A DNA stretch of 64,000 nt from Ascidiella aspersa (GCA_963924565.1 OZ004614.1:3844001-3908000); one strand, 5' to 3'; positions 41,598-61,984 are shown, numbered from the stretch's first letter. Notes: generated from the sequence alone by a model not told the origin. Numbers and translations: made by a program.

Positions 41598-44500
41598 CTA
41601 CAAGTGGCCTTCTAACATAATTACAATAATCAATAGACACGATACGAATAGAATGATACATATTATAAACACCTATTCAAAACTTTTTTTATAGGTTCGG
41701 TGGACACATTGACTTGAATTTTTTAGAAAAAAATAAAATCTCTAGGCAGTTAGAGCAAAGCAAGGCGTTGCATATTTTCAGTTGAATTTCGTAGAATTTT
41801 CTTGAAATAACAACACCAAAGTCAATCTTGAATTTCAGTAAGTTCTGAAACTAAAATAGAATAGTTTGGTTGATTTACTTGTTTGATCCTTATTTATTTG
41901 GAACGGAATACAATGCCTCCTAGGCCCTAGGGGTTCTAATAAAGGCAAGTTTATCAAATGTATGAATATCAATCTGACGTGAACTATACAAAATACAGTA
42001 TAATAAATATAAGTCATTCTGGTATAATTTTATTCTCGTATAATTTATTCTACTATGCCTGGTAGCAACAGCATATTTACTAAATGCAGCAGTGTGCTTC
42101 CAATAGGTTACTTGTCACCATTACTATTCTATGACAATTAATGCTTTTAGGGTATAAGGATAAATATTTTCACCTTCTTGGATCTTAATAAGACGTTTAT
42201 TCACTGGTGCATAGAAAATTGCCGACTCTTTACTTTGCAGAGGTACTATTTCTTTCACAATGCCGTGCACCAGCCATTTCCTTCGCTCGTAGCAAACAAT
42301 GGATCCACCCTTGCAGGTCTGGATTAAGTAAAACACAGCTCATAGGATTAAGTAAAATACAGCTCATAAATTTACTAAAAAGGATATTCGTGACATCGAA
42401 ACACGTTGTTTGACTTTCAAATACATTTTCTAACTTTCAAACAAACACAAAACAATTGAAAGCAAGTCGTTGAACGACAGTTTAAGACTACTAAAAATGA
42501 TCAAGATTGACAAGTTAGAAATATATAAATCTCACAACTGATTTAGAGCAATAAAACTAGGTATATTTAAGATTTAGAACGTGTCAAACAGGCTATTTTG
42601 TGGAATCGAAACACGGCATTTGACTTTTATTAACATTTTAAAGGCTAAAAGCAGGTTTTTGAAGGACAGCTTTACACTATAAGCAATGAACAACAATGAC
42701 GTGTTAGAAATATATAAATCTAACTATTTTTTGCACATAAATGATTTAGACGAAATAAACTAAGTAGGCTACCTATATTTAAGCTTAAGATTTCTTAAAA
42801 GTCTATGCACAATAAAAATATGGGTGAAACGACGTAGCACTCAATTAACTTGTAAATAGTTCTTCAATTAAATAGTTCTTTGTTACCTTTGGTATATTAA
42901 CTCCCTTGCTGGTTACCGCACACCAAAGTCCTACATGCGGTTTGTAATCAAGGTGTTCAGTGACATTGGCCATTTCTGATTGATTGATCATTTTCAGCGC
43001 CGCGGCGCCCTTTTGTGGCGAAAAACGTCCGGTTTGGTCTGTGAAAGCAAAATAAGTGAAACACAACAGCATTACAGATTGATGTTTTGCGTGTAGGCGT
43101 GTAGCTTAGTGCTTGGTGCCTTAAACTCTATAGTTGTAAAAATGTTTATTGTTTTGGAAGAGTTATGCAACTTATTAGCGGCTATTCGATGTTTTACAAA
43201 CTGACGATAATTAGCGATTTCGTTATTTGAAAAAATGATCAATCTGTCTCGTTTTATTGCTCAATAACCTATCGGAAATTTAAAAATGGATAAAAATATT
43301 GTCCTGAAAACTAATCTCCTACGCGTGTGAAAAATCTCATTGTCGTCAACTTAATGAACTACGTCACATCTTCACGAAGAGAGAAAAAGTTATACTTAAA
43401 CCTGCAATATTCCAGCCAGCAATGTAGCAGTTTGACTTTTTTCCGTTCTTGACCCTTGAACCCTTCGAAAACTCCCTGACAGGAACGGTGACGTCACTTA
43501 TACACGCTGACGTGACGTAAGGAGTGACGGTAAGTTTGCGTTCCAAGGTCATCACCGCGAACCCGGAATCGCCATTTTTGCTGTCGTCCGCGGTTCTTAA
43601 AAGCAATAAAAGTACTTTTGAGCTGCTGCAAACAGGGCTACATGCGGAGTCGGTTTATTTTTCTGGAGTCGGATTCGGGACTTGAGTTAGACCACGTAAA
43701 GTACCCGAGTCCGACGTGCGCATGCGCAGTAGCAAATTTCGAAATTAATATGGCCGCCAACTGTAAATTGTAATGGCGGGATAGAAAATAGTGTGATATT
43801 TTCCAACCACTTATTGTAGGTGGATGAGTTATATGACACCCACATGAGTGGATTGCTGAAAATCCACCTTATTTTAGTTACGAAATGGGTAAAATACAGG
43901 CTGTGGAGTCGCAACCGGACTCGGGACTCGACGAAATTGTACATTTTGCCGGATTTGGAATTGGGACTCGGGTTATTTGTAACCGACTCAGTAGCACTTG
44001 TTTCAATCGCGTGTTTCAACAGCGAAAAGCAAGCACGTCAAGGTTATTTGCAAATATTTTTCTATTACAAACCAGTCCGAAAGTATAGTTCTAAGTTCAA
44101 TTTGTTATCAAAGCAATACAGATACGTTTTGTGGGTTAATCTATTGATGCATATCAAGTAATTTCCCTTTGGCATATCGCTTTATTAAACTTTGTTTCAG
44201 TAGTTTAAATAAACACTCAAACACAATCCGCTTTTGATAAAAAAGTTACATTTCTTAATCAACTGAATGAAATGTTCACAAGTCAGCTGGTTTAGAGGCT
44301 GTTTAAGAAAAAGTTTTTTTTTTGCAAAAACTGGCATTCGTTTTCTTCGTTCTTGAGAAAGTTGTTTGAATTAAAAATACTAGCAAATAATAGACAATGT
44401 TCTTGCGTCTCTTACCGATATACCTTTTTGACCGCAATCCTCTGTTCCGGGGATTCTCTCATCGTCATAACGTGTTTGCCAACGTACACCACAATTCCAT

Positions 44501-47500
44501 TGCTGAACACAAAATGCAGTTTTATTTCTCGCGAAATCAGTACAACTCAACATAGTTTAAAGGTTAAACAAAAAGCCGAACTTGTACAAATACAGCTCAG
44601 TCATACTCCCATACCTTCGAAAATCCCTCACGCAATCCCATGACGTCACGATATGCGTTAATGACGTTATGGTCCCCTGGCAAATGATCCCGTAGGTCCT
44701 ATTGGTCAGTTGGTCGGTTGTTACCATGGCAACCCACGGCCAGTAGCCCTCGTTTTGGCTCCTTATGACTGCGACCGAATTCTGCATAAAGCATAATGAC
44801 GTTTGCTTTGATATAGTTAGGAGGTTGTTTTACTTGGTAACATTTTACCGCCTTTTGTTCCACTCTTGTGAAGATATTATATTTTGTTTGCGGTGTATCC
44901 GTTTTAAAACAGATTTTTTTTCTTTTGTTCTAATTTTTTTTGTTTAAGCCTAAGTTTTTGGTTTCTGCTAATCTGTTAAAACTATTGGCCTTGATTAAAA
45001 ATGTGGCAGCTAACAACTTTGACGGTTTGATTTTTTATTGATGTATTGTATGATTTGGGGATATGATAGACTGATAGATGAAGGATTCCAGCGCAAAAAA
45101 ATCAACATCGATATGTAGTTTTTCATTCAAAGTATTGTTAGTTCTGTAAGATCTAAACAGATTGCTGATTATCACAAGTACTAGAGGCAGCATTAAGCGA
45201 AGTTGACTACACAACCTTGGTATTTGGTTCCGGTAAGGAGGACATTGCACACCCAATGTCTTCTTCTTTGTCTTCAAACCCTTTTCCGTGACCGCCCTCT
45301 GTAAAATAATGAGTTGAAGCTTAAAGTTATTGATTAGGGCAGGCTGATGAGGATATTTTAATGGCGTTAATTTATCATAGAAAAGCATAAACAATGCATG
45401 AAATTCGAAGACACCTAACTTGTTTTTGTTTATCCAATAATCTAGAGTTATGCCATTATGTAACTTTGTTTGTACTTAGATAAATCAAACACCATACGTC
45501 ATTAATTTTGTCATATGTATGGAAAAGTTAAATTGAGGTTTTCGTCATATATATATTTAAGAAGCAGTGACAATAAAGAGATGTTGCTGCCATCAACATT
45601 GTTTGTTTTATGGCCTGATATTTAAATTAACCAAAAAATGAAATTGTCCCTTTAATATTTAAAAAGTTTGTAAATCTTATATCAAACGAGAATTTTAAAG
45701 TTATACTACAATTCTAGTTTTAACCAATTTGTTAATGCAGAACACATATTCAATAAAGTCGATATTGCGCTGTTTACAAACGTTTTGTTTTTGTTATCGT
45801 TACTTTTTTACACTGATGTTAGCTGTATTACAGGAACTTTGGAAACAGCGGAATGTCGATTTTATCGAATATAGTTCATTTCTTATTTTGACAAATTCAA
45901 TGAAGCAGAACAAAATTACCCTTACCACCAGACGTCCAGCGAAACGTGAAACCACGTGACATTACATTTTCTTGTGCGTAATAAACCAGCACCAATGAAT
46001 TTCCGCTTGCGCTGAAGAAGTTATCATCTAAGCGATGGTGGCCGCACATTTTTTTGACGTTCAACTAAAATAAATTGCGAGCATTTTTTTTTGTGTTTTG
46101 CAAAATCAAACACGACCCTGGCACGATCATGAATGTATCAAAAAACTTTATGTTAATTGCTTTAAAGCGATTTGTTAACCAGAGGGGTGCTCAACTGTTC
46201 CAAGGGGATGCGGGGATGCTAGATTGGGAAGAAAAAATGTGTTACTGTAATTCACTTCTTCGCTCAGTTAAAAATAAGCCTAACTCACATTTAGGTATTT
46301 TGTTACTGTGCTATAAGTTACACAAATTACAATGGTTTTGTTATTTAAGCAATTCTAGAAAGGGGTTTACAAGGTGTGCGAGAATTAGTTCTGGTGATTT
46401 ATATATTTCAGAACGTCAGTTTTACATTTAAATTTCTACCAACACCCAATTTTAAGTAGGTAAATTTTTTTTGAAAAGATGACAATTTTTTTTTGAAGTT
46501 TATTGAAATTTTTAAATAAATCTTTGTTACTATTTTTGTTTAAATTTCTACCAACATCCGAGATAAAATTTGAGGAAAACATTCGTTTGAAACCTTTTTC
46601 ACAAACGTAGTCTTCCTGTCAAAAATGTCCACGTAAGCGAAGCGGCATCCGTTCGACGTCGGTAGGTCAAAGTGATCGAAGGTGGAAGTCAGGTTCTGAA
46701 GATAAACAATGCATTTCAATAAAATTGGACAACAAACTTATATATACATCCTAGGACAGCCTAAAATGACTAGTTATACCAAATGTCGTTTTTTTCGCGC
46801 ATTGGCAACATACAAGTTAAGTTAAATTAGGAGCTAACTGTAATTGGTTAATCAGTTAAGGATTCCGTGTGATGTGATTTAAGACAATGACCTCACTTAA
46901 GTGCACTAAAAGTGATTGGAGTTAAAAGTCAGATTCTGAATAAAATCAATTCGTTTTAAGGAAATGAACAACTAAAATCTTACAGCCGAGAAATATCAAA
47001 TGTCGTACAAAAAAAATCGCGCATTTCCAACATACTATAAAACATTTTAACTAAAACCAACTAGCAGCTAACAAAAATCAGTTGATTAAATAACAGTTTT
47101 ATGAAGCCGGGCTAAAAATTAATTTGCAATGAGGTTTAAACTCAAAATCTCTGCCATACCCCGGGACACATAATTTGTGATTTATTGCTTTCGCTAATTT
47201 AATGTAGTGCTCCGTTGGCAAATATTTCTTTTGCAAACTAAATTATTTGTTTTATCCTCTTGCAAGAATGCACAACTAGTCGAACGAAACCACTCCTGTT
47301 TTTTCTTCTCAAAATGATTATTGTCTACAAATCGTTTCTTTTTAATTAGCCAAAACAAAAGGTAGTCGAGTAAGGGTTCTTAAACTGGGGTCCATGGACC
47401 CCTTAGGGGACCGTGGACTAGTTTTGGGGGGGTCCATGAAGGTCTAATTGAAATATTAGTGTATATTTAGGAAGTAATCAATTTATCAAACAAAACTGTT

Positions 47501-49063
47501 TATTTAAAAACAAAACGGTTTTGCACTGAAACTCTCCATTTCACTTTCACATTTTTTGGACCGAATTCAGCAGATTTAAGAAGTCTATTTGTATTGTGAC
47601 GTAAATTTTTAACGTCATTTTGCCTACCGTGGTCCACGCGAGCCCCCAAAAATTTTAGGGGTCGGCGGTAAAAAAGTTTAAGAACCCCTGTAGTAGCGTA
47701 TACTATGGACGGATCTGTTATGTAGCTTGAGAATAAATTGCAAAGCCAAAACAATCGAGTAGATCGACATCATCTTGATTTCGTATCGAAACGTACTTGG
47801 CCATGTTTAGTTAATGTTACTGAGAAGTAGTTCAAGCATCACTTATAAATGGTGGGACGCAATTGTTATCATTCTGAGTTTTTGCGCCACACCTTTTAAA
47901 AGTTATGGATGAATTACTCTCAATTTACATCAACTAAAGATGATACAAGCTCATATCTAAACGCCTTAATCAAAATGGTAGTAAGTTTGAAAAAAAAACA
48001 GTTATGTCTTACTAATGTTTTATACCGAAAGGTCTCAACGTTTGTTGATTCGTACAGACAAGGAGCTCAAGTTTATTATTCTATAACAAGCTCGGTCGTA
48101 ATTCCACAAGATACCATACCGTGTTTGCAGGGGTGGAAATCAACCATTCGTGTCTCACGATGTCCGTACTCCATGCAACTGTACCGGGTGAGCGAATCGT
48201 ACCACTGTGTTCGTTTCTCACGTGCTTTTTGACGCCTGCGATTTAAAACGTTTTAGCAAAGCTCAGTCCGTCATGTTTAAAAGAGTTAAAAAAAAAAATT
48301 GGTAAAATTTAAGTTAAATCAACTTTAGACGCTTGGCACGAAGGGATTGCTTACTTCCAGGGTGCTTATTTTTTTAGTATTCGCAATAACCTGATGTTTT
48401 CACTTTAGACAAGAAATAACAAAAAATATTTTGTTTATTTTACAGTTCATTTTTCAACTGGAATAACAGTGATTTAAAGTTAACTCAAATGGCAATATAT
48501 TTGTTTCCAATCAATTTAACATTTTACATATCAGTCAACAATATTAAAAAGAGGCTACAAGAACTTACATTGCGATTGATGGGCCTTCGGAAAGCAATTA
48601 ATGAAACAAATACGTTTTAGCAAAAAAACTAACAGCAAGCATTATGGGTGTTTTTGTTGTCATTAAATTAAAAAGATAAGCAAAATCAACTGAAGCAAAA
48701 ACGAAAATTCAGTGCACCTTACCACTACGTTAATATTAATTTAACTAAGCTGTGATTTAAAATTGTAAATAAACAAAAATCGTAAATAAGATTTATACAA
48801 ATCTTAGCTGCTTTATCTTAAAGCAGAATAATGCAAGTACTAAAATGGCGGCCAGTTCTGGTAAAAGCTTTGATTTAAATGCATGGGAAAAGGCAGAGAG
48901 CGTTAAAACAGGAATAGATCCGCAAAAAAAGTTACAAAGCTCCATCAATTTAAACTGTTAAGTACTCACCAACGGTCGTGGCGGCGACGGTTTGATATAG
49001 GCAAACAGAAGCTACACAAAAACACAGTAAAAACGCCTTAAACAAAGTCATAGTTACAAACAT
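41598..49063 (-). CDS. Secreted CUB-domain serine protease homologue (catalytically inactive), ~430 aa; exons 49063-48970, 48235-48120, 46695-46594, 46064-45926, 45298-45216, 44781-44615, 44502-44416, 43595-43402, 43038-42887, 42318-42174, and uncertain last exon 41611-41598 (alternatively read-through to the stop at 42124)
   Basis: Signal peptide MTLFKAFLLCFCVASVCLYQTVAA. CUB motifs SGTIRSPG, FDHFDLP..GCRFAYVDIFD, MCG..SGNSLVLVYY..RGFTFRW. S1-fold motifs NEGYWPWVAM, ICQGT, TPYVTSAC, CYIAGWN, GGSIVC..WLVHGIV. Triad positions read TSWDC, SGFAVM and TCKGG. The frame is open through all exons. Confidence 0.85.
43633..44000. mobile_element. Putative MITE with ggagtcgg/gactcg subterminal repeats
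   Basis: Begins cagggct. Internal ggatgagttatatgacacc..agtggattgct..aatacaggctgt is shared with a copy at ~38200-38400 in YIPF6 intron 1. Confidence 0.7.
47371..47690. mobile_element. hAT MITE, same family as 19766-20096
   Basis: Shares ggttcttaaactggggtccatggacccc, internal sequence and the right end agtttaagaacccctg. TSD is degenerate. Confidence 0.85.
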
Positions 49064-49137
49064 AGAGGATCTGTGAAGAAAGGTCAGAATATACGACTGT
49101 TGATAAACCCCAAATGGCTTGATGTTTGTCTGCCAAA

Positions 49138-49515
49138 CAAAGTGGTGACTGTCGCAATCACACTCAACCAACAACCTGGGTTCTCCCCTCAGGTGGGTGC
49201 CTATCGGGTTTTCCCCAATAAGCGACACCTGAGAATTTTAATCCAGGCAAAGCGGTGACTGGCGCTGTGATTTTATGTGGCACATGCCTTATCATGCCTG
49301 TTAACATTTTTGGCGATATTTCAAATAATGGATTTTGGCTGTAAGCCTATGAACCGAGTGTTCTTCTAATAGTAAGATATAAATTATAAAAATTATTGGC
49401 ATTTAACTGTTATTGCATAACAAAGCGGTGAATGTCGCAATCACCTTCATAAAACAACCTGGGTTTTCACCTTGGGTGTATGCCTATCGGGTTTTCTCCT
49501 ACAAGCGGCACCTGA
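49138..49515. promoter_or_regulatory. Duplicated ~95-bp module upstream of the pseudo-protease, with Rel/Dorsal-type and E-box motifs
   Basis: Copies at ~49138-49232 and ~49421-49515. GGGTTTTCCC at 49206-49215, GGGTTCTCCC at 49178-49187, and CAGGTG/CACCTG E-boxes. Function is inferred. Confidence 0.4.
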
Positions 49516-49899
49516 TTTTTTTAACCGTGACGACTAGGTTGAAAAGAGAAACATTTGGACATCACTTAATAATGCAAACATCGCGAAGTTTATTTTTTTG
49601 CCAATTGCCAGAGGAACCTGTTTTAAATATACTACGCCTGGTAGCAACAGCATATTTATCGCGAAGTTTAGTTAGTTAAACATCATGGAGGTATTTCAAA
49701 TTAAAAACGACCAATATCGTTCCACATAATGTTCTTTAGAAAGTGGTGGATCTAAACCAACGTTTTCAAGCATTCATTGCATCCTAAAACACCATGTCCC
49801 TAAAGGAAAAAAGTGGTTGTTGTTGGGTAAAGTTTCGAATTAAAGCCTATTTATTTTTAGCACAGTTAGATGCAGGCATATTTAGCTTAGATGCTAGAG

Positions 49900-50390
49900 C
49901 AGTGGTTCTCAAACTTTTTTAAGCGCGACCCAAATCTGAGTTTTATGAGCATCTCACGACCCAAGTCTCAAACATCAAAAAATGTACTTTTTCTGATATG
50001 CATGAAATAGAAAAAAGACACAGACAACCATGAAACAATGATTGATTACAAACAGTGATTGATTTATTTTAGTGTGATTGGTGAAACTGAATTTTTTCAT
50101 TTATAATATCAGTGTGGCTTTTTTGAGCTTACACCAGTCTTAGCAGCTACTGTAGCTGGCTGCCATCAAAACGTTCATAAAACCACTTATGATGCAATAA
50201 TCCAGGTTACAGATTTGAAGCCACGTGAAAAGCTTATAATGCAACAATTCAGTCATAATTGAATTGAAAATATTCTAAAAATGAAATGAAAAAAGTTCGT
50301 TTGCGCAAGATTGAGCCACCCTTGAGCGACCCATTTTTTGACCCTGTGCGACCCATGTTTGGGTGGCGACCCATACTTTTTTTTTTTAAT
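49900..50390. mobile_element. hAT-type MITE with a degenerate right end
   Basis: Starts cagtggttctcaaact. Subterminal gcgaccca repeats at both ends. Confidence 0.65.
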
Positions 50391-50826
50391 TATGTAGCCT
50401 AGCAATTACCCTACCGCAAGGCAATATGTAAAGACCTTTTTTTAAATTAAATCGGTAATCGAAGTCTATACAGAAGTAGATAGCATTTTGAACGTTTCGA
50501 AAAACTCTTTGAAGGTTAAAAATGACACCCACTTCTGTATGGGCTTTGATATTCTTACTACGTCTTACTCCAACAATTATGCTCCAAAATCGGTTAATAG
50601 TTACGCATTTCAAATTTTGCATTCTGCATGCCTACGAGTTGATTATTTTCCGAAATTATCAATAGTTCTGCTTCTGCGGAACACTTTAGCTCACACTTTA
50701 ATATAATTAATCACTCGAATACACTACTGGTGCAAGACACAGCGGTATACCTTATTCTATTTCTTATTTACATACGAAACACTGTTGGATTTGCACTGAG
50801 CTTCATCACACAATTTCTTTTTATGT

Positions 50827-51714
50827 TCTAGCGGAACCATACTATGACGCAACAGTGTGGCATTCAGATGGCGAAACTCTTTCAAACGTCACAATAGGCT
50901 TTCACCGGTCGACCTTCGGCGCGTGGTGTTTACCCAAACTAGAATGGAATGCAGATTATGTGACAAGCTCCTACACCAGGGATGTCCAACCAGCGGCGGT
51001 TGAAATTTGTTTGCGGCAAAGTACCATTTTAAACGTTCAATTAGCCTAATTAAAATGTACCAGTCAGCCTTTAGGGGCGCAATAATAGTATAGTATGGGT
51101 AAAAAAAATATATATGTAACTCTAAAGGTCCGTTATAACTCTAAAGGCCAATACTTAATCTTGAAACGTAATAGGTTCTGCGGCCTATTAAATTATTTCA
51201 AGTGTTAATGCGGCCCACTATAATAAAATGTTGGAAATCCCTGTCCTACAAACATGTACGACTGAATATGTTTTAATGCAACTCTATTGACCCTTGCAAG
51301 ATAAATGTCGACCTTAATTCCTGATCAGTAAGCAGAATACTCTAGCAAACCTAGTAATTCAAGTCAGACACAATTAAATGATTTTAAAAGATATAGATAT
51401 ATTTCGACAGCAAAGGCGTCGTTTGTTTATCTTAGCTAGAATAAATCAAATATCTTTTAAAATCTTCTTTGCTAGAGTGTTTTGCTGTTACTGATCAGGG
51501 ATTAAGTTCGACATTTATCTTGCAAGGGTCAAGGTGATTTCCATTATCCCATATTCAGTGCAATGTGTGTGGGAGCTTTTGTACACCAAATCTGCATTCT
51601 AGACAGTTTGGGTAAACAACACCTGCTGAAATTAGACTAGTGAAAACGTATTGTGACGTTTAAAAGAGTTTCGCCATTTGATTGCCACACTGTTGCGTAA
51701 GAGTCTCTGCTAGA
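50827..51714. repeat. Long imperfect inverted repeat (arms ~50827-51394 and ~51450-51714) between the two divergent CUB-protease genes
   Basis: Blocks acgcaacagtgtggca, atggcgaaactcttt, aaacgtcacaata, tgtttacccaaact, ttgacccttgcaagataaatgtcga, ctgatcagtaa and gattttaaaagatat recur as reverse complements in mirror order. Confidence 0.92.
50977..51243. mobile_element. hAT-type MITE inserted in the left arm of the palindrome
   Basis: TIR cagggatgtccaac / gttggaaatccctg (13/14). TSD tcctacac / tcctacaa. Absent from the right arm. Confidence 0.85.
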
Positions 51715-53161
51715 GTATTGTAAAGCCCTAACACAGGTATCCCGCCTTTTAATATGCTGTATAATCGCCCCAAAAGAGCGTCTGTTGTGCTGTCCGTTGG
51801 TTTGCCAGTCAAGCGGTGAAACTTTACGAGAAACGCGATACTGGCTAACAAACGCGACGAAAATCACACACAGGCCAAGATAGAGTGTAGAGCTTAGCTC
51901 GCATTACGGTTACGACTGGTAGGTTTAGGACATTAAGCAATAGAGATAGCCAGATGTCTTTTTCATCAAAATGGAAAACGTTTTAAAATACATTTATGTA
52001 GAGGGTTTGTACAACATGATAGAGAAGTGCGTTTAATCTATTAAATGCCTAAAGCTTACAGTACTGTAGGCTACTGGTTTAACCTGACTTAAATTGTGCT
52101 AAGACTTAGGTTTTTAAAGTTGTCGAGGTTTTAAAGTTGTCGTTCATTGCAACAGGTTTAGAATAAAACGTTTTTCAACACTAATTGCAGCGTTACATAT
52201 AGGTATATTGCTCTAGCACCATATCGCCGGGTGTTATTCGGCTTGCAAAATGATACGTAAATCATGTAACTTGTCTTCTATTAGGCAACAACGCCTGCAT
52301 ATTTAAAACAATGGTTACGGCTTGCCTGTTCACTTACCCTTATGCTGTAAATCCAGGATAACACAACAAATTTTAGCTGTAAAACTTTAAAACACGACTG
52401 ACACAGCATATAATTGTCATTAAGTTAGGCGGATACACCTGAGAAGGCAGAGTAGGCTACTTGAGGGCAACATCCGTTATTGTTGTAGGTGTGCACGTCG
52501 ACTGGCGTGCCTTTGTCTGGCCCACTTGCCATAGAAAAGGCTGATTCTGGCTAAAGAGAGAAAGTGGGTGTCAACAGCTTTTTCGCTTACAGTGTTAACC
52601 TAAAGGGGAAGTACCCGTTGCTCACCCTTCTGAGATTGCGCTTTGGCTTCAATGGTTGGAAAAATGTATCTAGGAAAGGCTGTTTAAACCGTTAGCTGTC
52701 TGTTGTTGAATTACCTACTCTTCATGGCATTGCTTTATATGATGTAAGAGGTTTATCAGTATCCAGTTTCGATATTGCAGTTATTTGTGAAGGCTGTAGG
52801 CTACATTGAAATGAAAGCAAACTTCAACAGTGCTTATTCGTGTTGGGGCATTGCCCTCGAAAAGCCAGGCCGCGTATTTGGTTAATTGTCACAGTGTTTG
52901 TGTGTAAGTTTTTGTTTTGATTAGAGGGGGGTCGCTATTATGAGTAGCATAAATGTAATATGATTTTTTTTCTTTTAATAGCACATCACGTTTGACCAAC
53001 TATATTAAACTAAAAATCAGCAGAACATTTAACTAATTTGTGACACCCCAATGGATTTTCTTGCGAAATGCGATGTTTTAGAGCCTGGTTTTAATCTGGC
53101 CCAAGCGACATCATTACAATTGTTTAACTGTCTTGTGTTTCTAGCCTTGAATAAATTCAAA

Positions 53162-56100
53162 ATGAAGCATTTGGCGTTAATAATTTTGCTGTTTCCACCG
53201 CTTGTGCATTGTCTGATGGACCCGGAGTTGGTTGAACTAATCAAGATTAATAGATTGCTAAAAGAAGTACAGACAACCACGAGCATGTGTAGGTTACTGA
53301 TGCTAAATTATATTTTTTTAATTTCTTTCTTTGTTTAGTAATATTGTTTTGCTTGTAACACATACGTCCACATGGGAAAACACAGTAGGACCTACACAGT
53401 AACAATACCTAAATAAATCTATAATATCATGGTATTAAGACCGATAATAAAGCATAAATAAAACCAAGTACGCAGTAATATCCAGGACAGAATACATACC
53501 TAATCCTCTGAATAAGACATAAATCCGCCGGAAAAGGTCCTATAATCATCAGAAATAGACCTAAATGGTCAAAACAACGCTTGAAACTGTAGAAATGGTT
53601 ATGGGAAGATCATGGGCCATGGGTCTCTGGCATCGGCCGAATGGTTGTCGACCTTTGGACGCCATAGTTTAAACGTCGCCGCTGTTTTGGAACGGCTTCT
53701 TATTGGGCCCTGTTTGGGGTTAGTGGCGGGTAATGGGTACGGTTAGAACAGAAATTATTAGGGAAGTTAATCCTGTTTTGGTCTTATTCCGAGCTGTGTT
53801 TTGATCTGACGGTGTCTTATTTCGATCTTATGGCATGAGTGCGTCCAACTACTATAAGTTATTGCTTAATTGGCTTTTCGTTGTATAGAGAACTAAATCG
53901 TTTATGGGCCGCTGTTCGATTGGTTGCAAATTTTCATTTTCACTGCAACGGTTCACGTATTCCGATTGATTAAGATTTTTATTTAAGCAATCCCTAAAAT
54001 TGCTAAAGGAAACGAAGGCATGGCTCATATTAAATAATTTTGACTTTATCAGCGCTAATGGCTTCTTTGTGTTTTGCTCACCATAAGCTTACAAAACCCA
54101 GCGAAGTTATTGCAAAACTCCAAGTTAATTTAAAAACTCCAAAGCTTCGATGTTGTACCTAGGCGTAGTATTTGGGCTGCCGCGGAAAAAGTTTGAGAAA
54201 CACTGATAAAGATACAACCTTCGAGATTGTAAAAACAAAAATATGTGAAAAATTGTTTTTGTAAAAAATAAATGACTATAAGGCTTATAAACTGCATTTT
54301 CACCATTGGTTAGCAAGTGCAGTCAGTTTCTCACGGTCAGTTGTAAATTTACAAGAAATAAACGCCGACCGATTTTATAAATCCGTGTTAAAGTCATTAA
54401 TAGGCAAGGCGGAACCCATGTCTGCAATGTCGGTGTGGGTTAACACCGCGTACTTCCCTTATTCCAACACCACGCAAAACGCCACCGCCATATAATCCAT
54501 TGTGATAAATAGAACTTTTGCTAAACATTTGCTATGAAAACACGACTGTTTGTATTGCGAAATCGCGTATACACGCTTGTGACAAGAAAACTTTCGCTGA
54601 TTAACCTTTTATACTTTTCAGTGGCCTGCAGTGATGGCTACGAATTCGACCCTACGCTTGTAGGGGAAATCTCAACACCAAATGGTCTCCAGTACATCAA
54701 TGGAACGAGCTGCGTTTGGACCATTAGAACAGCGAAAGACATGGTGAGAACGAATTCAGTGGTGTACTGGTATCCGACCACAAAATGCAGTATTCTGTGC
54801 TATTATCTTTATTTCCATTGCTTACCGGGTGTTTTAAGGCAGTAAAATACCAAAATCATTACTACTATTTACATTGATATTACCCCTGTCCTATAACCAA
54901 ATAAGCAAAAATGTTGACCTGCCGATGCACAGTTTTACTGTGGCCGCCCTACCTCTAAGTGGCGGCACCGTTTCCTTATGGGAGAATGGTTGTCCTGAGG
55001 ACTGGGTCTAAACATTACTGACATTTCAGGCATTCTCGGCCTACTTTTGGGTCAATGGGAAGAATACGCCACTACACGTTCACCATTTATTTTACATTTA
55101 CTTTGTTTTACTTAGTAACAAAAAAAACTGATGTCCATTACATAAAACACCTCCTTAGTTATTGTTTTAAAGTTAATTTGGACTGAATTTAGGTTGCAAA
55201 TAACTACAAATTTGTGACGTTTCAGATCTTGAAGCTCAACTTTGAAGAGTTCAGCATTCCGTTTGATGAATATTGTTTCTGGGGATATCTTGAGGTTTTT
55301 GATGGAAGCAAGCTTTCGGCAAAGGTAATACACCAACTTTTAGTTTAATAAAAAATATAACACGGTATTCATTTTCAGTATTTAATGTACTTATAAGAAG
55401 ATCAGATAATCTTGAATAAATATGTACATAACTTTAATAATTTAATTGCTCACTATAAATTAAAAACTTTGATTTAGTTAAAACGATTAAAACAGCATCC
55501 ATTTTTCTATATTAACAAAATACATGTTGGATTGCGGGTAGCACTATACTAATTAGACAAACCAGATTTGTTCAAGCTTATTCTGTCAATCTTGATTTAC
55601 GGACATTATATGATTACAATAGCAGATTGTTTCCCTTTGCTCGCCAACAAGCAAAAGGTGGATAACATTGCAAAATCACAACTTATACCCGTTTAAAAAT
55701 TTAGGAAATATGAAGTAAAGTGAATTTAATTGTTTAGTTGAAATCTTCCACTGAGCAGAGTTTGTGAGACAAACTACTGGAAACATTTTACTTATCGGAC
55801 AAGTTCCGATATCTGCGGCCAGAATGTTTTTTAATAGTTGAAATTATAAACTTCTGCTTTGAGTAAACTAACGACAAAAACAAATGTTAAATTCTACTGG
55901 TGCAGAATGTTTTCATAAATGTGATTATTCTGGAAAGGAAATAATCTTCACATTTATCGAAAAAAAAATATTTAAAAATCATCTATCATACAATCCTAAA
56001 AAATTGATATTGTCAAAACATGTTTTCACCATGATTTAAAACGTTTTTCCTCACGATTTTAACTGCGACAAACTTTAGATGGAAGATCGAAAGCTTTGCG

Positions 56101-59100
56101 GCCAGTTGCGCAACACCACGTTTGTGACGTCATCACACACGGCTGTGGTGACGTATTACGCGAGCGGGGCGACCAAGTATCGCAACTTCAGACTAAAGTG
56201 GACGAGTTTAAGTGAGAATCCTAATTTTTTACATATACCAAAAATGTTGTGCTATTCTAAGGAACCTTGCAATTGATTCGGCAAGACATATGCGTCCAAG
56301 TCTGTTTTATTATTTTTAACTCAAGATGTTATTAAGACTTAGTTGTAATTGTAATATTTGTCAATGCCCATATTTCTCTGATTCGAAACAAGGTAATCAG
56401 GTGGAATTTTTTTTATTTTGAAATAAAGTAATCATGTGGCAATTGTATAAAACAAATTGTATTGAATAATTATCGACAAGCTTTCGCACAACCGTTTTTC
56501 ATCAGGTCAAAGTAGAAATGCAGCATTTCGATATTTTTCTTTGCATAATGTCACCTGAACCCTATTTGGTAAATGTAAGTTCGTTTTTCCCGAAAGTGAT
56601 AATTTTTTAAAGTACAGTTAAACGAGTCCCGTGAAACTCGTGAATTCACCGGGATTAATAAAGCGACACAATTCAATATTCGCCTAAAATCGTTATTGTG
56701 TATATTGATGTTTAAAGCACACGCATACCAAGGTGATGGCAAAGTTGAAGTAAATGTTCCCATAATGTTTCTTTCATTTGAAAAAGCCTTCAATAGAAAT
56801 CTGATTTCTAGCTTATTTTTGCTTGTGCTAGAGCGACCATCTAAACAAAACAAGGAATGGGAAAAATGTGGAATGACTTCAAGGACTCCTGCTTACAACC
56901 AGGTCTGGTTTAACAATTTACCTCATAGGAGTGACATAAGTGTGCAATTTAAATTAGATTGCGTAACTCAAACTTTAAAAATTAACGTGTTCAGGAAAAT
57001 GGTAACACTGATAAAAACTTCCATGATTATTAAACTATAAGTACAGGATTTAGTAAGCCTACCATCAGTTTGTTTGAATGTTTTATGATAAATATATTTC
57101 GCTACTAAAAGCAATATCAGCATCTTTCAATTTGCATAAGATACTGATGATGCTTTTACGAGTGAATTATTTTCACATCCAAACAAACTGATTTTCGGTT
57201 TACTAAGTTCTATGCTTATTATTTAATCTTTATCATTGATGTGCAGCCAGAATCGTTTGTTTTTCGCCATTTGGATTCAGACAGATTTTGTTATTCGAAA
57301 GTATATTCTAAATAAAAACTTCCATGGGTGGAGATTTGATTTTAAATACATAGTTACTGTGAAGTTAAACTTTACGTTCCGAAAATTGAGACGAAATCTC
57401 AAAGTTGTTTTTGCAATCTCATAGTCTAAACCAGTGTCTGTTAACCTTTTTTACTTGGGGGCGCACCTAGAGACATATGAAAACGTGGCGGCGCACCTTG
57501 CGAGGGAAGCGAGCGCGAAATTTTTGAGGTGTACCCATATTTCTCTTAAATTGCCTGCAGTTTTCATTATATGGGTTTTATAGTTGCAACATTTAAAGGG
57601 ACCTCCATTCTTTGAGACTAAAAACGTTATTTTGTCGATCAAAGTCTTAATCCGATTAATTTTGCACTTATTTCGTCATGTTTTTCCTTTGGCTCGCGGC
57701 GCACCTAGCAACCTTCCATGGCGCACCAGTGCGCCGCGGCGCACCGGTTGAGAAACGCTGGTCTAAACATATAGTAACTTATTATATCGTGCGACGTTTT
57801 ATGTACAGCTATTTGACTACGACCGGATGCTACCAGTTACTTCAAACGAGGGATCTTGGCCGTGGCATGCTGGGCTGGTTACCAAGGGCTCTTACAACAA
57901 GTACTGCCAGGGGACAGTCGTGTCAAGCAAGTTCGTCCTCACTGCGGCTCATTGCGTTGAAAAGTAGGTTTATGTAGAGCAGGGTTTTTTTTTACCGTAA
58001 ACCTCTAATTTTTTTTTGTTTTACGTGAACAAAAGTTGGCAAGAAATTTTCAAAAATGACGTCAAACATTTGCGTCACAATACAAATAGATTTTAGAAAT
58101 ATGCTGATGATTTAAGTAAACCAAGTCTGAATACATTCAGTGCTAAAATGTTTTTTTTTAAGTAAAATATTTTCTTCGAAAAATTTTGGCCTTCATGGAC
58201 CCCCTAAAATTTCGAGAAACATTGATGCAGGGTAATTTGTTTAAAAAATAGGTAAAATTATTTAAAGTGAATCAAATCTTTGGCAGATTTTCTAAAATTA
58301 ACTATTTTTAGGTTAACGACTTCGGAAGTCCACTGTAGTCACATTTGCTTTTAGTTTTAAGCTAGGGCCGGCCGGTACTTTTTTGATACCGATATGTTGG
58401 ACAAAAAAAGTAACTTTAAAAAGTTTGAACCTACTGGTGATTACATTAAACATTGCCCAAAAAGTAGGAGCTTGAGGTAATATTAATTTTACATATTACA
58501 ATCCCGCTTTTTTATAATTATATATAAATCCATTTTTTGTGATTGCGTCTGAGCTACGAGGAAAGCTTATAACAATCCAATTTTAAGAAATTTCTTAGTA
58601 TACTGTAGTATTTATAATTGACCTTATACCAAATGATGTGTTTACAATGTACAGGCTCGAAAAAGGCGACTTTGAAATACTGGTCGGAAAGCACTTGTCG
58701 GAAGTGTGGGAACCAACTGAACAGCGATTGGCAGTTGCAAAAATTAGCTTGCCACCAGCAAGACAATTGTAAGTTGGAAGAAATAGTTACTTTCTGACAA
58801 CAAATTTAATGGGATTAGAATTTAAGCTAGGGTAGAATTTCCAGTTGAGTTAGTTGGACCGCAAAGCAACACGCAAATATTTTGATTTACTGTTTACGCA
58901 CAAGATACCAACATTACATTTCATATAACACCGTTTCTGTGAAAGGCACATCTCGCTAAAACTCACGAAGGTACAAACACGATACCAACACTTGTGATAC
59001 CAACATGATGCTACAAGATACACCATTAAAGATACCAACACTATAAGTTACCAACATTATAGATGCAAACACGATACCAACACTTGTGATACCAACATGA

Positions 59101-61984
59101 TGCTATATAAGATATCAAACCTACACAACATACTTTCTGAGGAACACACGAACATATGTTAGCTCTATCCATCTATAAGGCCGGGAGAGATACCCAGAAT
59201 ATACAGTATTTTAAGGTTGAATTATTTCTGCGCAGCAAAATGCTGCTCGAAGGATTAAAGAAAAAACTTCTCTTCGATTCGGTCTGGTCCGTGGTTTTTC
59301 CCGAGTTGGACATTTCACTGGTCGAGCTGAAAGGGGAAATCACCTTCACCCCATACGTCAGACCCATCTGTATGCCGTCACTTCCGCCCCAGGCCGGAGA
59401 TGACGCAATGTCCACAGGGTGGAATATAGCACATTTCGAAACTGTTGCAGGTAATATTACATTAGGTTAAAATTTACATGTTTCAATTTGGTTTATACAA
59501 CCTAAAATTTCAAATGCCAACCGCTGTTAGATAGCAACACTCAAAAAATGCGTTAAAATTGCCAAGTTTAACTGTTTGAAAGATTAAGTGAAAGCACACT
59601 AAAAGTGTTGACCAATGGTGTAAGCAGGAGAGTCAGGTTTGAACTTGCGACCTATACCCAAACAGACGATTTACCAACTGAGGTACCCAGGCCCAGAGAG
59701 GAGCGAGTCGAGATAAAAACATTGCTCTGTTGCCTTCTGCATCATGTTCGTAAAACTAGCCTGTGGTGAGATTTGAACAAACAACCTCTGTCAGACCAGG
59801 ACCGGGGCTAAGGTTTTAAAACTAAATCCGAAATTCACAATTTTCCAGGTCAAGTCCAATTCTGTGTCTAATTCGTACTCACATTTTAGCAATTTGTTAC
59901 TTTGCTTTTATTTACTTGTATAAAAAAATATTTTTTTTGTATTGTTAGCTCGAAGAGTAAAATAGAATCAGTAACGAATAAATGAAACAAGTATTTATAG
60001 CTTGGACAATTGGCAATTTACATAGCACAGACGAATAGTAATCACCACAGGCAAAACAGCAATGAAATGCGGTACAATTCACGTGAATGTGGAATGCGCG
60101 TACGCGATTACTGCTGTCTAGAAAGTGCACGAAGCGGAACCACAACAGAGTGATAGGGATTTTTACATTCCTTTATGAAATGAAGAGAAAGCTTGGCTAA
60201 TCTCACTTTACTCAAAAATTAAAATCATATTTTGTTAATTTATTATAACCTAATAAATATTCGCTCATTCTTAACGTTCAGGCAAAATGAACCAACTTCG
60301 CCCGAAACACCAGGAATTGAAGGAGATAATGGTTGAAATATCTGACCAAGAGTTGTGTGATTCACTGCTGGCTGTGAGCGAAATGGCGACAAGCGAAAAC
60401 CACGGCGTAATATGCACCGCTAGCGGGCGCCAGATCTCAAAGACAATTGCTGACACTGGACAAGTAAAAAGCTGCGTTCTTGTTGAAAGCTAGTTTTTGT
60501 AGCCTGGCCTTGCTTGCAAAGCAATCCTGATTAGGTGCATATAGGACGGGAATTTTTTTCCTGGAAGCCGTGGGTGGGATAGGGCGATGCATTAAGATTG
60601 AGGTTAATGTGGAATTTATAGGAGGTTAAGCATTAAAAAGCTTGCTTTAAAGAAATAAAACGCTTCGCCAATCGATGACAATATTTACTAAATTGCGCCG
60701 CATTTGTAACGGATGTGTTGAAAGCATACTTAAACTTTTAATTGCTTGTTTGTCTGATGATTAATTTTATTTTTTGTTCGTTTTTCGTTTATACCGATTT
60801 AGGTGTTACCCTTTTGGAAGAAACACGGTAAATTATGATGAGTATTGGTCTGTATTGTTGTTCAGCATTGCTAGACCACAGTATATATCCATGTGAACCC
60901 CATGGCTTAATAAGCATTGTATTTACCAAACAGTGCTCGGTTTTGTGTGCAGCTACTGTAGACCCTTGAAGCATTATTATTTGCTCCTTGTGGCTTTGCA
61001 AAACAAAGCTATCTACCACAATTTAGCAATATATCTAGACAAAGTCAAACCATTGGGAAAGTATTTTGGTTAAAATGAAATTTCGGATTTGTAAGCCACA
61101 AAGTTTGTAATTTATTTAGAAACCCTGCTAACTTAATTGTAATGCTGCATAGTCCATGGCGCCTATAGAGTTAAAACAAGAAGGTAAAACATATCAGATA
61201 CTAATAAGAATATGAAAGATGGGGTATCATTTTGAACATGTCGAATAACTCTTTATTAAGAAATATTCAAAACGTTCAAATTGCTACCTACTTTGTATGG
61301 GCTTTGATAGTCTTACTGCGTCTTGGTACAACCTCAAACCATTACGCTCCAAAATGTAAGACACTGATTTTCAGGGTGATTCTGGCGGGGGCATGTTCCA
61401 GCTTCACGAAGGAAGATGGGTGATTGCTGGTGTTCTAAACTCGGTCATTACACTAAACCTCATAGGTAAAGCAAATAGCCAGTGGAGCAGTGTACATCAC
61501 CATCTGCCCTGGATCAAACTAGGTAAGAAATTATTTATTGATTTGTAGTTAAAAACTGGTGTTCCGTTTTTCACCGAACTTTTCGAAATGAGGTTTTGCC
61601 TGTTGAGATTTCCTGCCTGTGCATTTGTAATTTCCCTATTACGACGATCTGCAAAGATACTCAGACTTCGAGTATTTATTAAGAGGGTACAGTAATTTTT
61701 TTTATAAGGATACATTGATTTACATTGTAGGTATGCCTTCCTATTTTCTTCCAACAAACCTTGATATTTATTAATTTTGGATTTACAGTGTGTATGGAGT
61801 TTCATAATTTTTTTTAACAATTTTTTTTTAAATGAAGTAAATCATGTTGATTATGTTGGCTTAAAAAATACATGATTAACTTTTGATTGCTCCTAAAAGA
61901 GGATGTACTTAAGTTTTTACAAATTTTTTTTCAAATAAATTTGTTTTTTTATTGTTTGCAGTGACAAGGAACACTGTCAACTGA
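53162..61984 (+). CDS. Secreted CUB-domain S1A (trypsin-fold) serine protease, 462 aa; exons 53162-53288, 54622-54743, 55226-55324, 56079-56211, 56832-56902, 57809-57963, 58655-58768, 59236-59450, 60282-60463, 61375-61522, 61962-61984
   Basis: The spliced 1389-nt CDS is open. Signal peptide MKHLALIILLFPPLVHC. CUB domain: GEISTPNG..CVWTI, LNFEEFSI..CFWGYLEVFDG, LCG..FRLKW. Protease motifs: GSWPW, LTAAHC, LDISLVEL, RPICMP, GDSGG, LPWI. Confidence 0.9.
57432..57760. mobile_element. hAT (Buster-like) MITE with subterminal gcggcgcacc repeats
   Basis: TIR cagtgtctgttaacc / ggttgagaaacgctg. Perfect TSD gtctaaac. Confidence 0.88.
58960..59105 (+). repeat. GATACCAACA-based minisatellite with a 39-bp exact duplication
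   Basis: aaacacgataccaacacttgtgataccaacatgatgcta occurs twice, with further gatacca units around it. Confidence 0.85.

What the first reader, a model, noticed from the sequence alone, without database searches (positions are those of the whole stretch)
41598..61984. Head-to-head enzyme / pseudo-enzyme pair of secreted CUB-serine proteases
Seen in sequence: two divergently transcribed genes (ATGs at 49063 on - and 53162 on +) share the architecture signal peptide-CUB-Cys linker-S1 domain. They have the same intron phase series (1,0,0,1,0,2,2,1,0, and a final 1 if the uncertain last exon is used). They also share unusual motifs: NEG.WPW, CQGT, VGKH..E..EQR.AV.K, TPYV, and GWNIA in place of GWG. 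One has an intact triad; the other has none but keeps an open frame. Established: inactive S1 homologues act as cofactors or regulators of active proteases (e.g. arthropod clip-SPH cofactors in prophenoloxidase activation), and CUB domains mediate dimerisation (C1r/C1s, MASPs). Inference: an old inverted duplication gave a co-regulated protease plus a dedicated cofactor or inhibitor, possibly a heterodimer acting in immunity, fertilisation or tunic remodelling.
Basis: partly seen in the sequence, partly recalled or inferred. Interest (0 to 1): 0.8.

Follow-up and report, generated by a model that had tools for sequence, protein, structure and literature searches.

The report
Paired live and dead CUB proteases
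Two neighbouring sea-squirt genes that point away from each other encode related secreted proteins, one a probable protease and one that has lost its catalytic residues; the same pair occurs a second time on the chromosome, and the dead copy is still kept by selection, so this is a solid but fairly ordinary enzyme/pseudo-enzyme pair.

Summary
Window 42124-49063 (-) and 53162-61548 (+) each give a clean 10-exon, GT-AG model: signal peptide, one CUB domain, a one-cysteine linker, an S1 protease domain. Intron phases are identical (1,0,0,1,0,2,2,1,0) and sit at the same alignment columns. The plus protein keeps His/Asp/Ser; the minus protein lacks all three.

New here: a second head-to-head pair lies 1.13 Mb away on the same contig (C8:5014918-5032811). 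Each gene's nearest paralogue is its counterpart there (52% and 44% identity), not its neighbour (about 25%). Both minus copies lack the triad, so the loss predates that duplication. Synonymous sites are saturated (pS about 0.72). pN/pS is 0.50 for the minus genes and 0.40 for the plus genes, and the dead S1 domain is as conserved as the live one (50% against 53%). The minus lineage is therefore a selected pseudoprotease, not a pseudogene.

In an S1 tree the four genes and one Phallusia mammillata protein form a clade (100/99).

Not shown: expression (no reads on the minus exons in about 6% of one RNA run), co-regulation, heterodimer formation or any biological role. The scan had not noted this on other DNA. 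It is a new member of a known kind, of moderate interest.

The parts
48970..49063 (-). minus gene exon 1: ATG at 49063, hydrophobic signal-like N-terminus; donor phase 1
48120..48235 (-). minus gene exon 2: CUB part 1. Both cysteines of the first CUB disulfide are missing, in minus2 as well.
46594..46695 (-). minus gene exon 3: CUB part 2 (YVDIFD)
45929..46064 (-). minus gene exon 4: CUB part 3
45216..45298 (-). minus gene exon 5: linker with one Cys. This is the least certain exon; an alternative acceptor at 45280 is also in frame.
44615..44781 (-). minus gene exon 6: S1 start, NEGYWPW, CQGT, TSWDC (His57 replaced by Asp)
44416..44502 (-). minus gene exon 7: VGKH...EQRIAVKK
43402..43595 (-). 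minus gene exon 8: DSGFAV (Asp102 position is Gly), TPYV, GWNIA
42887..43038 (-). minus gene exon 9
42124..42318 (-). minus gene exon 10: TCKGGSIVC in place of the GDSGG loop (no Ser195); stop codon 42124-42126
49064..53161 (.). 4098-bp spacer between the two start codons. It holds a transposon-like inverted repeat (50841-51704) and a repeat at 50458-50590. It shares no other sequence with the 4069-bp spacer of pair 2.
53162..53210 (+). plus gene exon 1: ATG and signal-like N-terminus. The gtctga donor matches the gtctgg donor of plus2; an alternative phase-1 donor at 53288 is possible.
54622..54743 (+). plus gene exon 2: CUB part 1
55226..55324 (+). plus gene exon 3: CUB part 2 (YLEVFDG)
56079..56211 (+). 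plus gene exon 4: CUB part 3
56832..56902 (+). plus gene exon 5: linker with one Cys
57809..57963 (+). plus gene exon 6: NEGSWPW, CQGT, TAAHC (His57). Pfam Trypsin E 1.3e-8 on its open-frame piece 57767-57964.
58655..58768 (+). plus gene exon 7: VGKH...EQRLAVAK
59236..59450 (+). plus gene exon 8: DISL (Asp102), TPYV, GWNIA. Pfam Trypsin E 8.7e-5 on its open-frame piece 59141-59467.
60282..60463 (+). plus gene exon 9: the Cys168/Cys182 pair, and Asp at the position of residue 189
61375..61548 (+). plus gene exon 10: GDSGG (Ser195); stop codon 61546-61548

Best explanation
Shown:
- A single-CUB, single-S1 secreted protease gene was duplicated in inverted orientation long ago in a tunicate lineage.
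- One daughter (plus) kept the His-Asp-Ser triad. The other (minus) lost all three residues and the GDS loop, and became a serine-protease homologue (pseudoprotease).
- The whole head-to-head module was later copied again to a site 1.13 Mb away.
- Since then both dead copies have kept 10 intact exons and canonical splice sites. Their protein divergence is far below the synonymous divergence, and their S1 domains are as conserved as the live ones.
- Each copy keeps the linker Cys, the Cys at the Cys122 position and the Cys42/Cys58 pair.

Inferred:
- The minus protein is a functional, secreted, non-catalytic binding protein. It uses its CUB domain and dead S1 fold to bind a ligand.
- Most likely it acts in the same pathway as the neighbouring plus protease, either as a scaffold or cofactor or as a non-cleaving competitor for the same CUB-recognised target.
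- Plus1 probably cleaves after basic residues, because it has Asp at the position of residue 189. Its activation must be non-canonical, because the family has no R-IVGG end.
For: - Gene models and identical phases and positions.
- CUB identity. S1 identity.
- Second pair, collinear exon by exon.
- Triad kept in plus1 and plus2, and missing in both minus1 and minus2.
- Selection: pS 0.72 (saturated) against pN 0.36 for minus1/minus2. pN/pS is 0.50 (bootstrap 0.43-0.57), against 0.40 for the plus pair.
- S1 domain identity is 50% for the dead pair and 53% for the live pair.
- S1 tree: the four genes and Phallusia P0115 form a clade at 100/99, with (plus1,plus2) and (minus1,minus2) each at 99-100.
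- No other family member in the genome at exon level.
- The second haplotype seen in DNA run X1 carries 3 synonymous and 4 missense changes in exons 8-10, with no stop or frameshift.
Against: - No read on any minus-gene exon in the one RNA run of this species. About 6% of it was read (3.9 million pairs) and the tissue is unknown.
- The plus gene's expression could not be tested.
- No splice junction is confirmed by RNA. All models are in silico.
- The two spacers share no sequence apart from a repeat, so there is no sign of a conserved bidirectional promoter.
- Keeping two neighbours together through a block duplication needs no selection.
- The plus proteins are atypical: no IVGG, no Cys191-Cys220, NSV/NGP in place of Ser214-Trp215-Gly216, and plus2 has Arg at Cys58 and Gly at position 189. 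Their activity is inferred, not shown.
- dS is saturated, so dN/dS values are rough.
Confidence: 0.6

Rival explanations
1. Neighbours by descent only. Both genes are functional, but they act independently, in different tissues or on different ligands. The head-to-head layout is just the scar of an inverted tandem duplication, and a later block duplication copied it passively.
For: - The duplicated block is small (about 18 kb) and would carry both genes automatically.
- The spacers share only a repeat.
- The plus and minus proteins are only about 25% identical, with a very long stem branch to the minus clade (2.55 changes per site). That is compatible with a wholly new function.
- Tajima relative-rate tests show no correlated rate shift between partners (10 against 14, and 14 against 20).
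Against: Both pairs have stayed intact, in the same orientation and with nearly the same spacer length (4098 and 4069 bp), over a time long enough to saturate synonymous sites. This is suggestive but rests on two pairs only.
Confidence: 0.3
2. The minus genes are silent relics, meaning pseudogenes or genes on their way to loss. Their open frames are only a remnant of past constraint.
For: - Zero RNA reads on all minus1 exons in run X4.
- Exonic and intronic SNP densities between haplotypes are alike, at about 1.3%.
- The triad is completely lost.
Against: - Two copies separated by saturated synonymous divergence both keep 10 exons, all GT-AG sites and no stop.
- pN/pS is 0.50, with the bootstrap upper bound at 0.57.
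- The dead S1 domain is as conserved as the live one.
- Only about 6% of one run of unknown tissue was sampled.
Confidence: 0.07
3. Neither partner is a working protease. The whole family (plus, minus and Phallusia P0115) has a non-canonical S1 domain used for binding, and the plus triad is retained for another reason or is only weakly active.
For: All family members lack the R-IVGG activation end and the Ser214-Trp215-Gly216 strand motif. The plus proteins lack Cys191-Cys220. plus2 has lost Cys58 and Asp189.
Against: His57, Asp102 and the GDSG loop with Asp194 and Ser195 are kept in plus1, plus2 and P0115 across deep divergence, whereas they were swept away in the minus lineage. This contrast is what continued catalytic selection predicts.
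Confidence: 0.15

Closest known systems
HrOvochymase / HrProacrosin of the ascidian Halocynthia roretzi, and ovochymase-type polyproteases (PMC9265791)
   Same: Secreted ascidian proteins that combine trypsin-like and CUB domains. According to PMC9265791, HrOvochymase has two trypsin-like domains, five CUB domains and a last serine protease domain that lacks a typical triad. Tunicate polyproteases (Styela P0090, Clavelina P0021) align to the window's models across a whole CUB-plus-S1 unit at 23-25% identity.
   Different: - In HrOvochymase the live and dead S1 domains sit in one polypeptide. Here they are two separate one-CUB, one-S1 genes in divergent orientation.
- In the S1 tree the window's genes do not group with the polyprotease domains.
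- No role in oogenesis or fertilisation has been shown here.
Phallusia mammillata CAB3266626.1 / A0A6F9DUH5 ('suppressor of tumorigenicity 14 protein-like', P0115)
   Same: The only database protein found that carries the family motifs (EGSWPW, CQ.T, VGKH...EQ, PYV, GWNI) together with an intact triad. It is 34% identical to plus1 over the S1 domain, its best match in this genome is plus1, and it lies in the same 100/99 clade.
   Different: - It is 318 aa with no CUB domain in the deposited sequence.
- Its position relative to the plus and minus lineages is unresolved (support 28/0).
- Its genomic neighbourhood was not available.
Non-catalytic serine protease homologues: arthropod clip-domain SPHs, vertebrate haptoglobin, protein Z and HGF (from general knowledge)
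   Same: An S1 fold that has lost the triad but is kept by selection as a binding or cofactor protein. Protein Z is also encoded next to active paralogues (F7 and F10) and regulates the product of one of them.
   Different: - There is no clip, CCP, Gla, EGF or kringle domain here. The accessory domain is a single CUB.
- The relationship is analogous, not orthologous.
- Partnership with the neighbouring gene is not shown here.
MASP / C1r / C1s complement proteases
   Same: CUB domains N-terminal to an S1 domain, and a chain-linking Cys to the position of Cys122.
   Different: Their defining CUB-EGF-CUB-CCP-CCP-SP architecture is absent. The window's proteins have one CUB and a 24-27-residue linker only.

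Membership tests
Peptidase S1 (Pfam PF00089 Trypsin) fold | Significant match of the sequence to the trypsin domain | tested here: met
   Plus exons 6 and 8 hit PF00089 on their own at 1.3e-8 and 8.7e-5. The minus exons do not reach Pfam singly. The local minus1 model does align to S1 domains of fetched proteins (P0115, 26% over 253 aa, E 5e-18) and to plus1 (E 7e-27).
Active S1 protease (plus gene) | His57, Asp102 and Ser195 with the GDSGG loop and Asp194 | tested here: met
   plus1 has TAAHC, DISL and GDSGG. plus2 has TAAHR, DISV and GDSGS.
Active S1 protease (plus gene) | Canonical zymogen activation site (Arg/Lys followed by Ile-Val-Gly-Gly) and the Ser214-Trp215-Gly216 strand | tested here: not met
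   plus1 reads DYDR-MLPVTSNEGSWPW, plus2 DYDL-MYPV and P0115 ESLYTNASEGSWPW. NSV or NGP stands in place of SWG.
Active S1 protease (plus gene) | Proteolytic activity | not testable with these tools
   This needs recombinant protein.
Serine protease homologue / pseudoprotease (minus gene) | S1 fold with the catalytic residues replaced | tested here: met
   His57 is Asp in minus1 and Gly in minus2. The Asp102 position is Gly in both. The GDS of the Ser195 loop has no counterpart (TCKGGSIVC and TIEGGSIVC).
Serine protease homologue / pseudoprotease (minus gene) | Retained by purifying selection, meaning not a pseudogene | tested here: met
   Both anciently diverged copies have intact 10-exon frames. 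pN is 0.36 against pS 0.72, and pN/pS is 0.50 (0.43-0.57). S1 identity is 50% against 53% for the live pair.
Serine protease homologue / pseudoprotease (minus gene) | Expressed as a spliced mRNA | tested here: inconclusive
   No read on any exon in about 6% of one RNA run of unknown tissue.
CUB domain (Pfam PF00431) | Match to the CUB domain | tested here: met
   Single exons give no Pfam hit. Exons 2-4 of all four local models align to regions that Pfam annotates as CUB: P0021 463-568, P0090 892-998 and P0146 435-544 (E down to 1.9e-11).
MASP / C1r / C1s | CUB-EGF-CUB-CCP-CCP-SP architecture | tested here: not met
   There is one CUB and a short linker, with no room for EGF or CCP domains.
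Ovochymase-type polyprotease | Several S1 domains in one polypeptide | tested here: not met
   There is one S1 domain per gene, and the two genes are on opposite strands with separate start codons.
Arthropod clip-domain SPH | N-terminal clip domain | tested here: not met
   The N-terminal domain is a CUB.
Enzyme plus dedicated pseudo-enzyme partner (functional pair) | Co-expression and physical or functional interaction | not testable with these tools
The only indirect evidence is that the pairing is conserved in two loci.

The most novel reading that the evidence does not exclude
The head-to-head unit is a selected two-gene module. A bidirectionally controlled CUB protease and its obligatory dead paralogue form a CUB-mediated heterodimer. 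This would be the split-gene equivalent of the live and dead S1 domains fused in ascidian ovochymase. The module as a whole, not the single genes, would be the unit that was duplicated and retained in this tunicate lineage.
Probability: 0.2. Interest if true: 0.6.

Novelty: new member of a known kind. Interest (0 to 1): 0.4.

Why it matters
Catalytically dead protease homologues are common regulators, but their partners are usually hard to guess. Here the genome offers a ready-made hypothesis. A live and a dead paralogue have stayed head to head in two anciently separated copies, and the dead domain is as conserved as the live one.

If the two proteins work together, the locus would be a compact, testable case of enzyme/pseudo-enzyme co-evolution in a chordate relative. 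It would also give a split-gene counterpart to the fused live-and-dead domains of ascidian ovochymase.

If they do not, it is simply a small, lineage-restricted CUB-protease family found in this species and Phallusia.

Tried and rejected
1. Candidate acceptors are weak, the peptides have no counterpart in pair 2, and minus2 has no donor before its stop. Rejected as unsupported.
2. RNA support. All 145 reads lay on high-copy intronic repeats (43600-43999, 47200-47999), and 142 of them fitted only partly.
3. A conserved spacer or bidirectional promoter. blastn of the two spacers found only a repeat that also occurs in a plus-gene intron. The 'palindrome' at 50841-51704 contains an element with more than 1400 candidate copies.
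4. Orthologues in databases.
   - The profile search with exon 6 of all four genes returned mostly multi-domain polyproteases. Only Phallusia P0115 carries the family motifs.
   - The word search with P0115 found nothing closer than 30% identity.
   - Weak single-domain orthologues below about 47 bits would have been cut from the top-150 list, so absence from other tunicates is not proven.
   - No minus-like orthologue was found.
5. Correlated rate asymmetry. ML branches suggest that both pair-2 genes evolve about three times faster than their pair-1 counterparts. Tajima tests are not significant, so this was dropped.
6. Pfam on single minus and CUB exons gave no hits.
7. The joined spliced models were not sent to any database search, family scan, fold prediction or look-up tool; those searches were done exon by exon. 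The joined models were used only inside local scripts. No structure or multimer prediction of the models was made.


Full report
**What is in the window**

The window has no N and is G000:C8:3844001-3908000 of a 308.6-Mb, 75-contig assembly. Its closest protein relatives are ascidian, and an earlier follow-up on the same genome (s1-790874) also calls it a tunicate.

Stop-to-stop reading of both strands and a listing of GT and AG sites give one clean model on each strand.
- **Minus gene, 442 aa:** 49063-48970, 48235-48120, 46695-46594, 46064-45929, 45298-45216, 44781-44615, 44502-44416, 43595-43402, 43038-42887, 42318-42124.
- **Plus gene, 438 aa:** 53162-53210, 54622-54743, 55226-55324, 56079-56211, 56832-56902, 57809-57963, 58655-58768, 59236-59450, 60282-60463, 61375-61548.

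Both models have ten exons, only GT-AG introns and no internal stop. Both have the phase series 1,0,0,1,0,2,2,1,0. When the proteins are aligned the introns fall in the same columns.

The least certain boundaries are the minus linker exon (45298 or 45280) and the plus exon-1 donor (53210 or 53288).

**Domains**

- Plus exons 6 and 8 hit Pfam Trypsin on their own, at 1.3e-8 and 8.7e-5.
- The short minus exons and the CUB exons do not hit Pfam singly.
- Exon by exon, plus exon 6 matches minus exon 6 at E 4e-10, and exon 8 matches at 7e-4.
- In local scripts the assembled models match each other at E 7e-27 over 385 residues spanning both domains.
- Exons 2-4 of all models align to stretches that Pfam annotates as CUB in fetched tunicate and annelid polyproteases: P0021 463-568, P0090 892-998 and P0146 435-544.

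The architecture is signal-like N-terminus, one CUB, a 24-27-residue linker with one Cys, and an S1 domain. The linker Cys and the Cys at the chymotrypsin Cys122 position (RPICMP and TSACIS) are present in all copies. This is the usual chain-linking pair.

**Catalytic residues**

| Position | Plus | Minus |
|---|---|---|
| His57 | TAAHC | TSWDC |
| Asp102 | LDISL | DSGFAV (Gly at the Asp position) |
| Ser195 loop | GQGDSGGG | TCKGGSIVC (the GDS has no counterpart) |

**The main new fact: a second pair**

Searching the species' own genome with single exons shows that each gene has a closer relative 1.13 Mb away on the same contig.
- The plus His exon is 67% identical to C8:5030033-5030197(+), and its exon 8 is 73% identical to 5031794-5031958(+).
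- The minus exon 6 is 57% identical to 5018325-5018516(-), and its exon 8 is 36% identical to 5016995-5017225(-).

I fetched C8:5006001-5046000. tblastx is collinear exon by exon on both strands. The same procedure gives two more 10-exon GT-AG models with the same phases:
- plus2: 5027110-5032811 (+), 456 aa
- minus2: 5023040-5014918 (-), 423 aa

The start-to-start spacers are 4098 and 4069 bp.

| Comparison | Identity |
|---|---|
| plus1 / plus2 | 52% |
| minus1 / minus2 | 44% |
| any plus / any minus | 24-26% |

plus2 keeps His, Asp and Ser (TAAHR, DISV, GDSGS). minus2 lacks all three (TSWGC, DSGLAV, TIEGGSIVC). The triad was therefore lost before the module was duplicated.

No third locus appears for exons 4, 6 or 8 at meaningful E-values.

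**Selection**

Nei-Gojobori counts on gap-free codons:

| Pair | pS | pN | pN/pS (bootstrap) |
|---|---|---|---|
| plus1 / plus2 | 0.724 | 0.289 | 0.40 (0.34-0.47) |
| minus1 / minus2 | 0.718 | 0.356 | 0.50 (0.43-0.57) |

Synonymous sites are at saturation. The module duplication is therefore ancient, and the corrected ratios (about 0.15 and 0.20) are rough. The direction is nevertheless clear: the dead genes have been under purifying selection.

By domain, the dead S1 domain is 50% identical between the minus copies, against 53% for the live S1 domain. The CUB domain is 44% against 53%.

A second haplotype in DNA run X1 differs in minus exons 8-10 by 3 synonymous and 4 missense changes, with no disabling change. 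That sample is too small to say more.

**Phylogeny**

A profile of exon 6 from the four genes was searched against 1.84 billion representatives. The list is dominated by multi-domain polyproteases. The only protein with the family motifs is P0115, Phallusia mammillata CAB3266626.1. It is 318 aa, has no CUB and has an intact triad. Its best match in this genome is plus1.

I built an IQ-TREE tree (LG+C20+F+G4) of 52 S1 domains.
- plus1, plus2, minus1, minus2 and P0115 form one clade at 100/99.
- (plus1,plus2) has support 100/99 and (minus1,minus2) 100/100.
- The stem to the minus clade is long, at 2.55 changes per site.
- The order inside the clade is unresolved (28/0).

The statement 'each other's closest paralogues' is true only at the level of lineages.

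Caveats:
- The bootstrap had not fully settled.
- The minus branch is long.
- S1 paralogues of this genome on other contigs were not modelled and are not in the tree.

A word search with P0115 found nothing nearer than generic S1 proteases. The family therefore looks lineage-restricted. Weak orthologues could still have fallen below the top-150 cut.

**Expression**

One RNA run of the species exists here (X4). I laid it on window 42200-48199, which covers minus exons 2-10. About 6% of the run was read (7.8 million reads). No read lay on any exon. The 145 reads that were laid sit on high-copy intronic repeats, and 142 of them fit only partly.

As a rough inference, this puts the gene below roughly 1 transcript per million in that sample. 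The tissue is unknown.

**Spacer**

The two spacers share only a short repeat (50458-50590) that also occurs in a plus-gene intron. The inverted repeat at 50841-51704, noted separately as s1-793724, contains an element with more than 1400 candidate copies in the genome. Nothing points to a conserved bidirectional promoter. At this divergence that is weak evidence either way.

**How it most likely works**

Shown:
- two sister lineages of secreted CUB-S1 proteins;
- one lineage with the triad and one without;
- both kept by selection;
- the head-to-head layout kept in two ancient copies.

Inferred:
- The plus protein is a protease. plus1 has Asp at the position of residue 189, which suggests Arg/Lys specificity, whereas plus2 has Gly there.
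- Its activation must be unusual. The whole family lacks R-IVGG, has NSV or NGP in place of Ser214-Trp215-Gly216, and the plus proteins lack the Cys191-Cys220 pair.
- The minus protein is a non-catalytic binding protein. Its most economical role is in the same pathway as its neighbour, as a scaffold, cofactor or competitor.

I put about 0.6 on that overall reading. I put about 0.9 on the shown parts and about 0.3 on the rival that the two genes are merely neighbours by descent.

**Comparison with what is known**

- **Closest described ascidian protein:** HrOvochymase of Halocynthia roretzi. According to PMC9265791 it has trypsin-like and CUB domains and a last serine protease domain without a typical triad. 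There the live and dead domains are fused in one polypeptide. Here they are separate divergent genes, and they do not group with the polyprotease domains in the tree.
- **MASP/C1r/C1s:** membership fails on architecture.
- **Arthropod clip-domain SPHs:** membership fails because there is no clip domain.
- **Protein Z next to F7/F10, and haptoglobin:** these are analogies from general knowledge, not relatives.

**Rule-bound omissions**

The joined spliced models were not sent to any database search, family scan, fold or look-up tool. Those steps were done exon by exon. The joined models were used only in local scripts, for alignment, dN/dS, the tree, and blastp/hmmsearch against proteins already fetched. 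No structure or heterodimer prediction was made.

**Verdict**

The finding is real and well supported. It is a lineage-restricted enzyme/pseudo-enzyme gene pair that is present twice, with the pseudo-enzyme under selection. It is a new member of a known kind, and I score its interest at 0.4.

Noticed in passing
window 50841-51704: The 'palindrome' between the two genes has arms at 50841-50940 and 51605-51704 (84% complementary) and inner arms at 51287-51331 and 51488-51532 (96%). It contains an interspersed element of about 230-290 bp with more than 1400 candidate copies genome-wide at 83-94% identity. It looks like a transposon or foldback insertion rather than a conserved regulatory palindrome, and it is absent from the spacer of pair 2.
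   Followed up: partly
window 43600-43999 and 47200-47999: These are high-copy repeats inside minus-gene introns. DNA word depth is 7,000-56,000 against about 57 elsewhere. They are the only places where RNA reads landed, and nearly all of those reads continue into unlike sequence, meaning they are transcribed copies from elsewhere.
   Followed up: no
window 50458-50590, 61185-61360; C8:5023997-5024220: A short palindromic repeat family is shared by the spacer of pair 1, intron 9 of the plus gene and the spacer of pair 2. It is the only DNA similarity between the two spacers.
   Followed up: partly
G000:C8:5014918-5032811 (L001-L004): The second head-to-head CUB-S1 pair. plus2 has Arg in place of Cys58, so its Cys42 has no partner, and Gly at position 189. 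Its intron 8 is only 64 nt long.
   Followed up: yes
G000:C2:14712639-14773524: A cluster of S1-protease exon matches with a weak CUB-exon match (E 0.1). It may be another CUB-containing protease array. It was not modelled and is not in the tree.
   Followed up: no
window 28441-31011 (+): An 856-aa open frame rich in Ser, Lys and Pro, with repeated 'KPSWV.RKDELKP'-like units and strong AT skew. It is probably a large exon of a low-complexity protein and is unrelated to the finding.
   Followed up: no
P0016 (JGI metagenome contig, 86 aa) and P0074 (ENA contig, 121 aa): These are environmental genomic fragments with family-like motifs (EGSWPWQAM, CQGT, VYVGKH...EQR) and an intact His. They also carry an insertion before CQGT like that of the minus lineage. 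P0074 reads through an intron, so it comes from a eukaryote. They may be relatives from unsampled tunicates.
   Followed up: no
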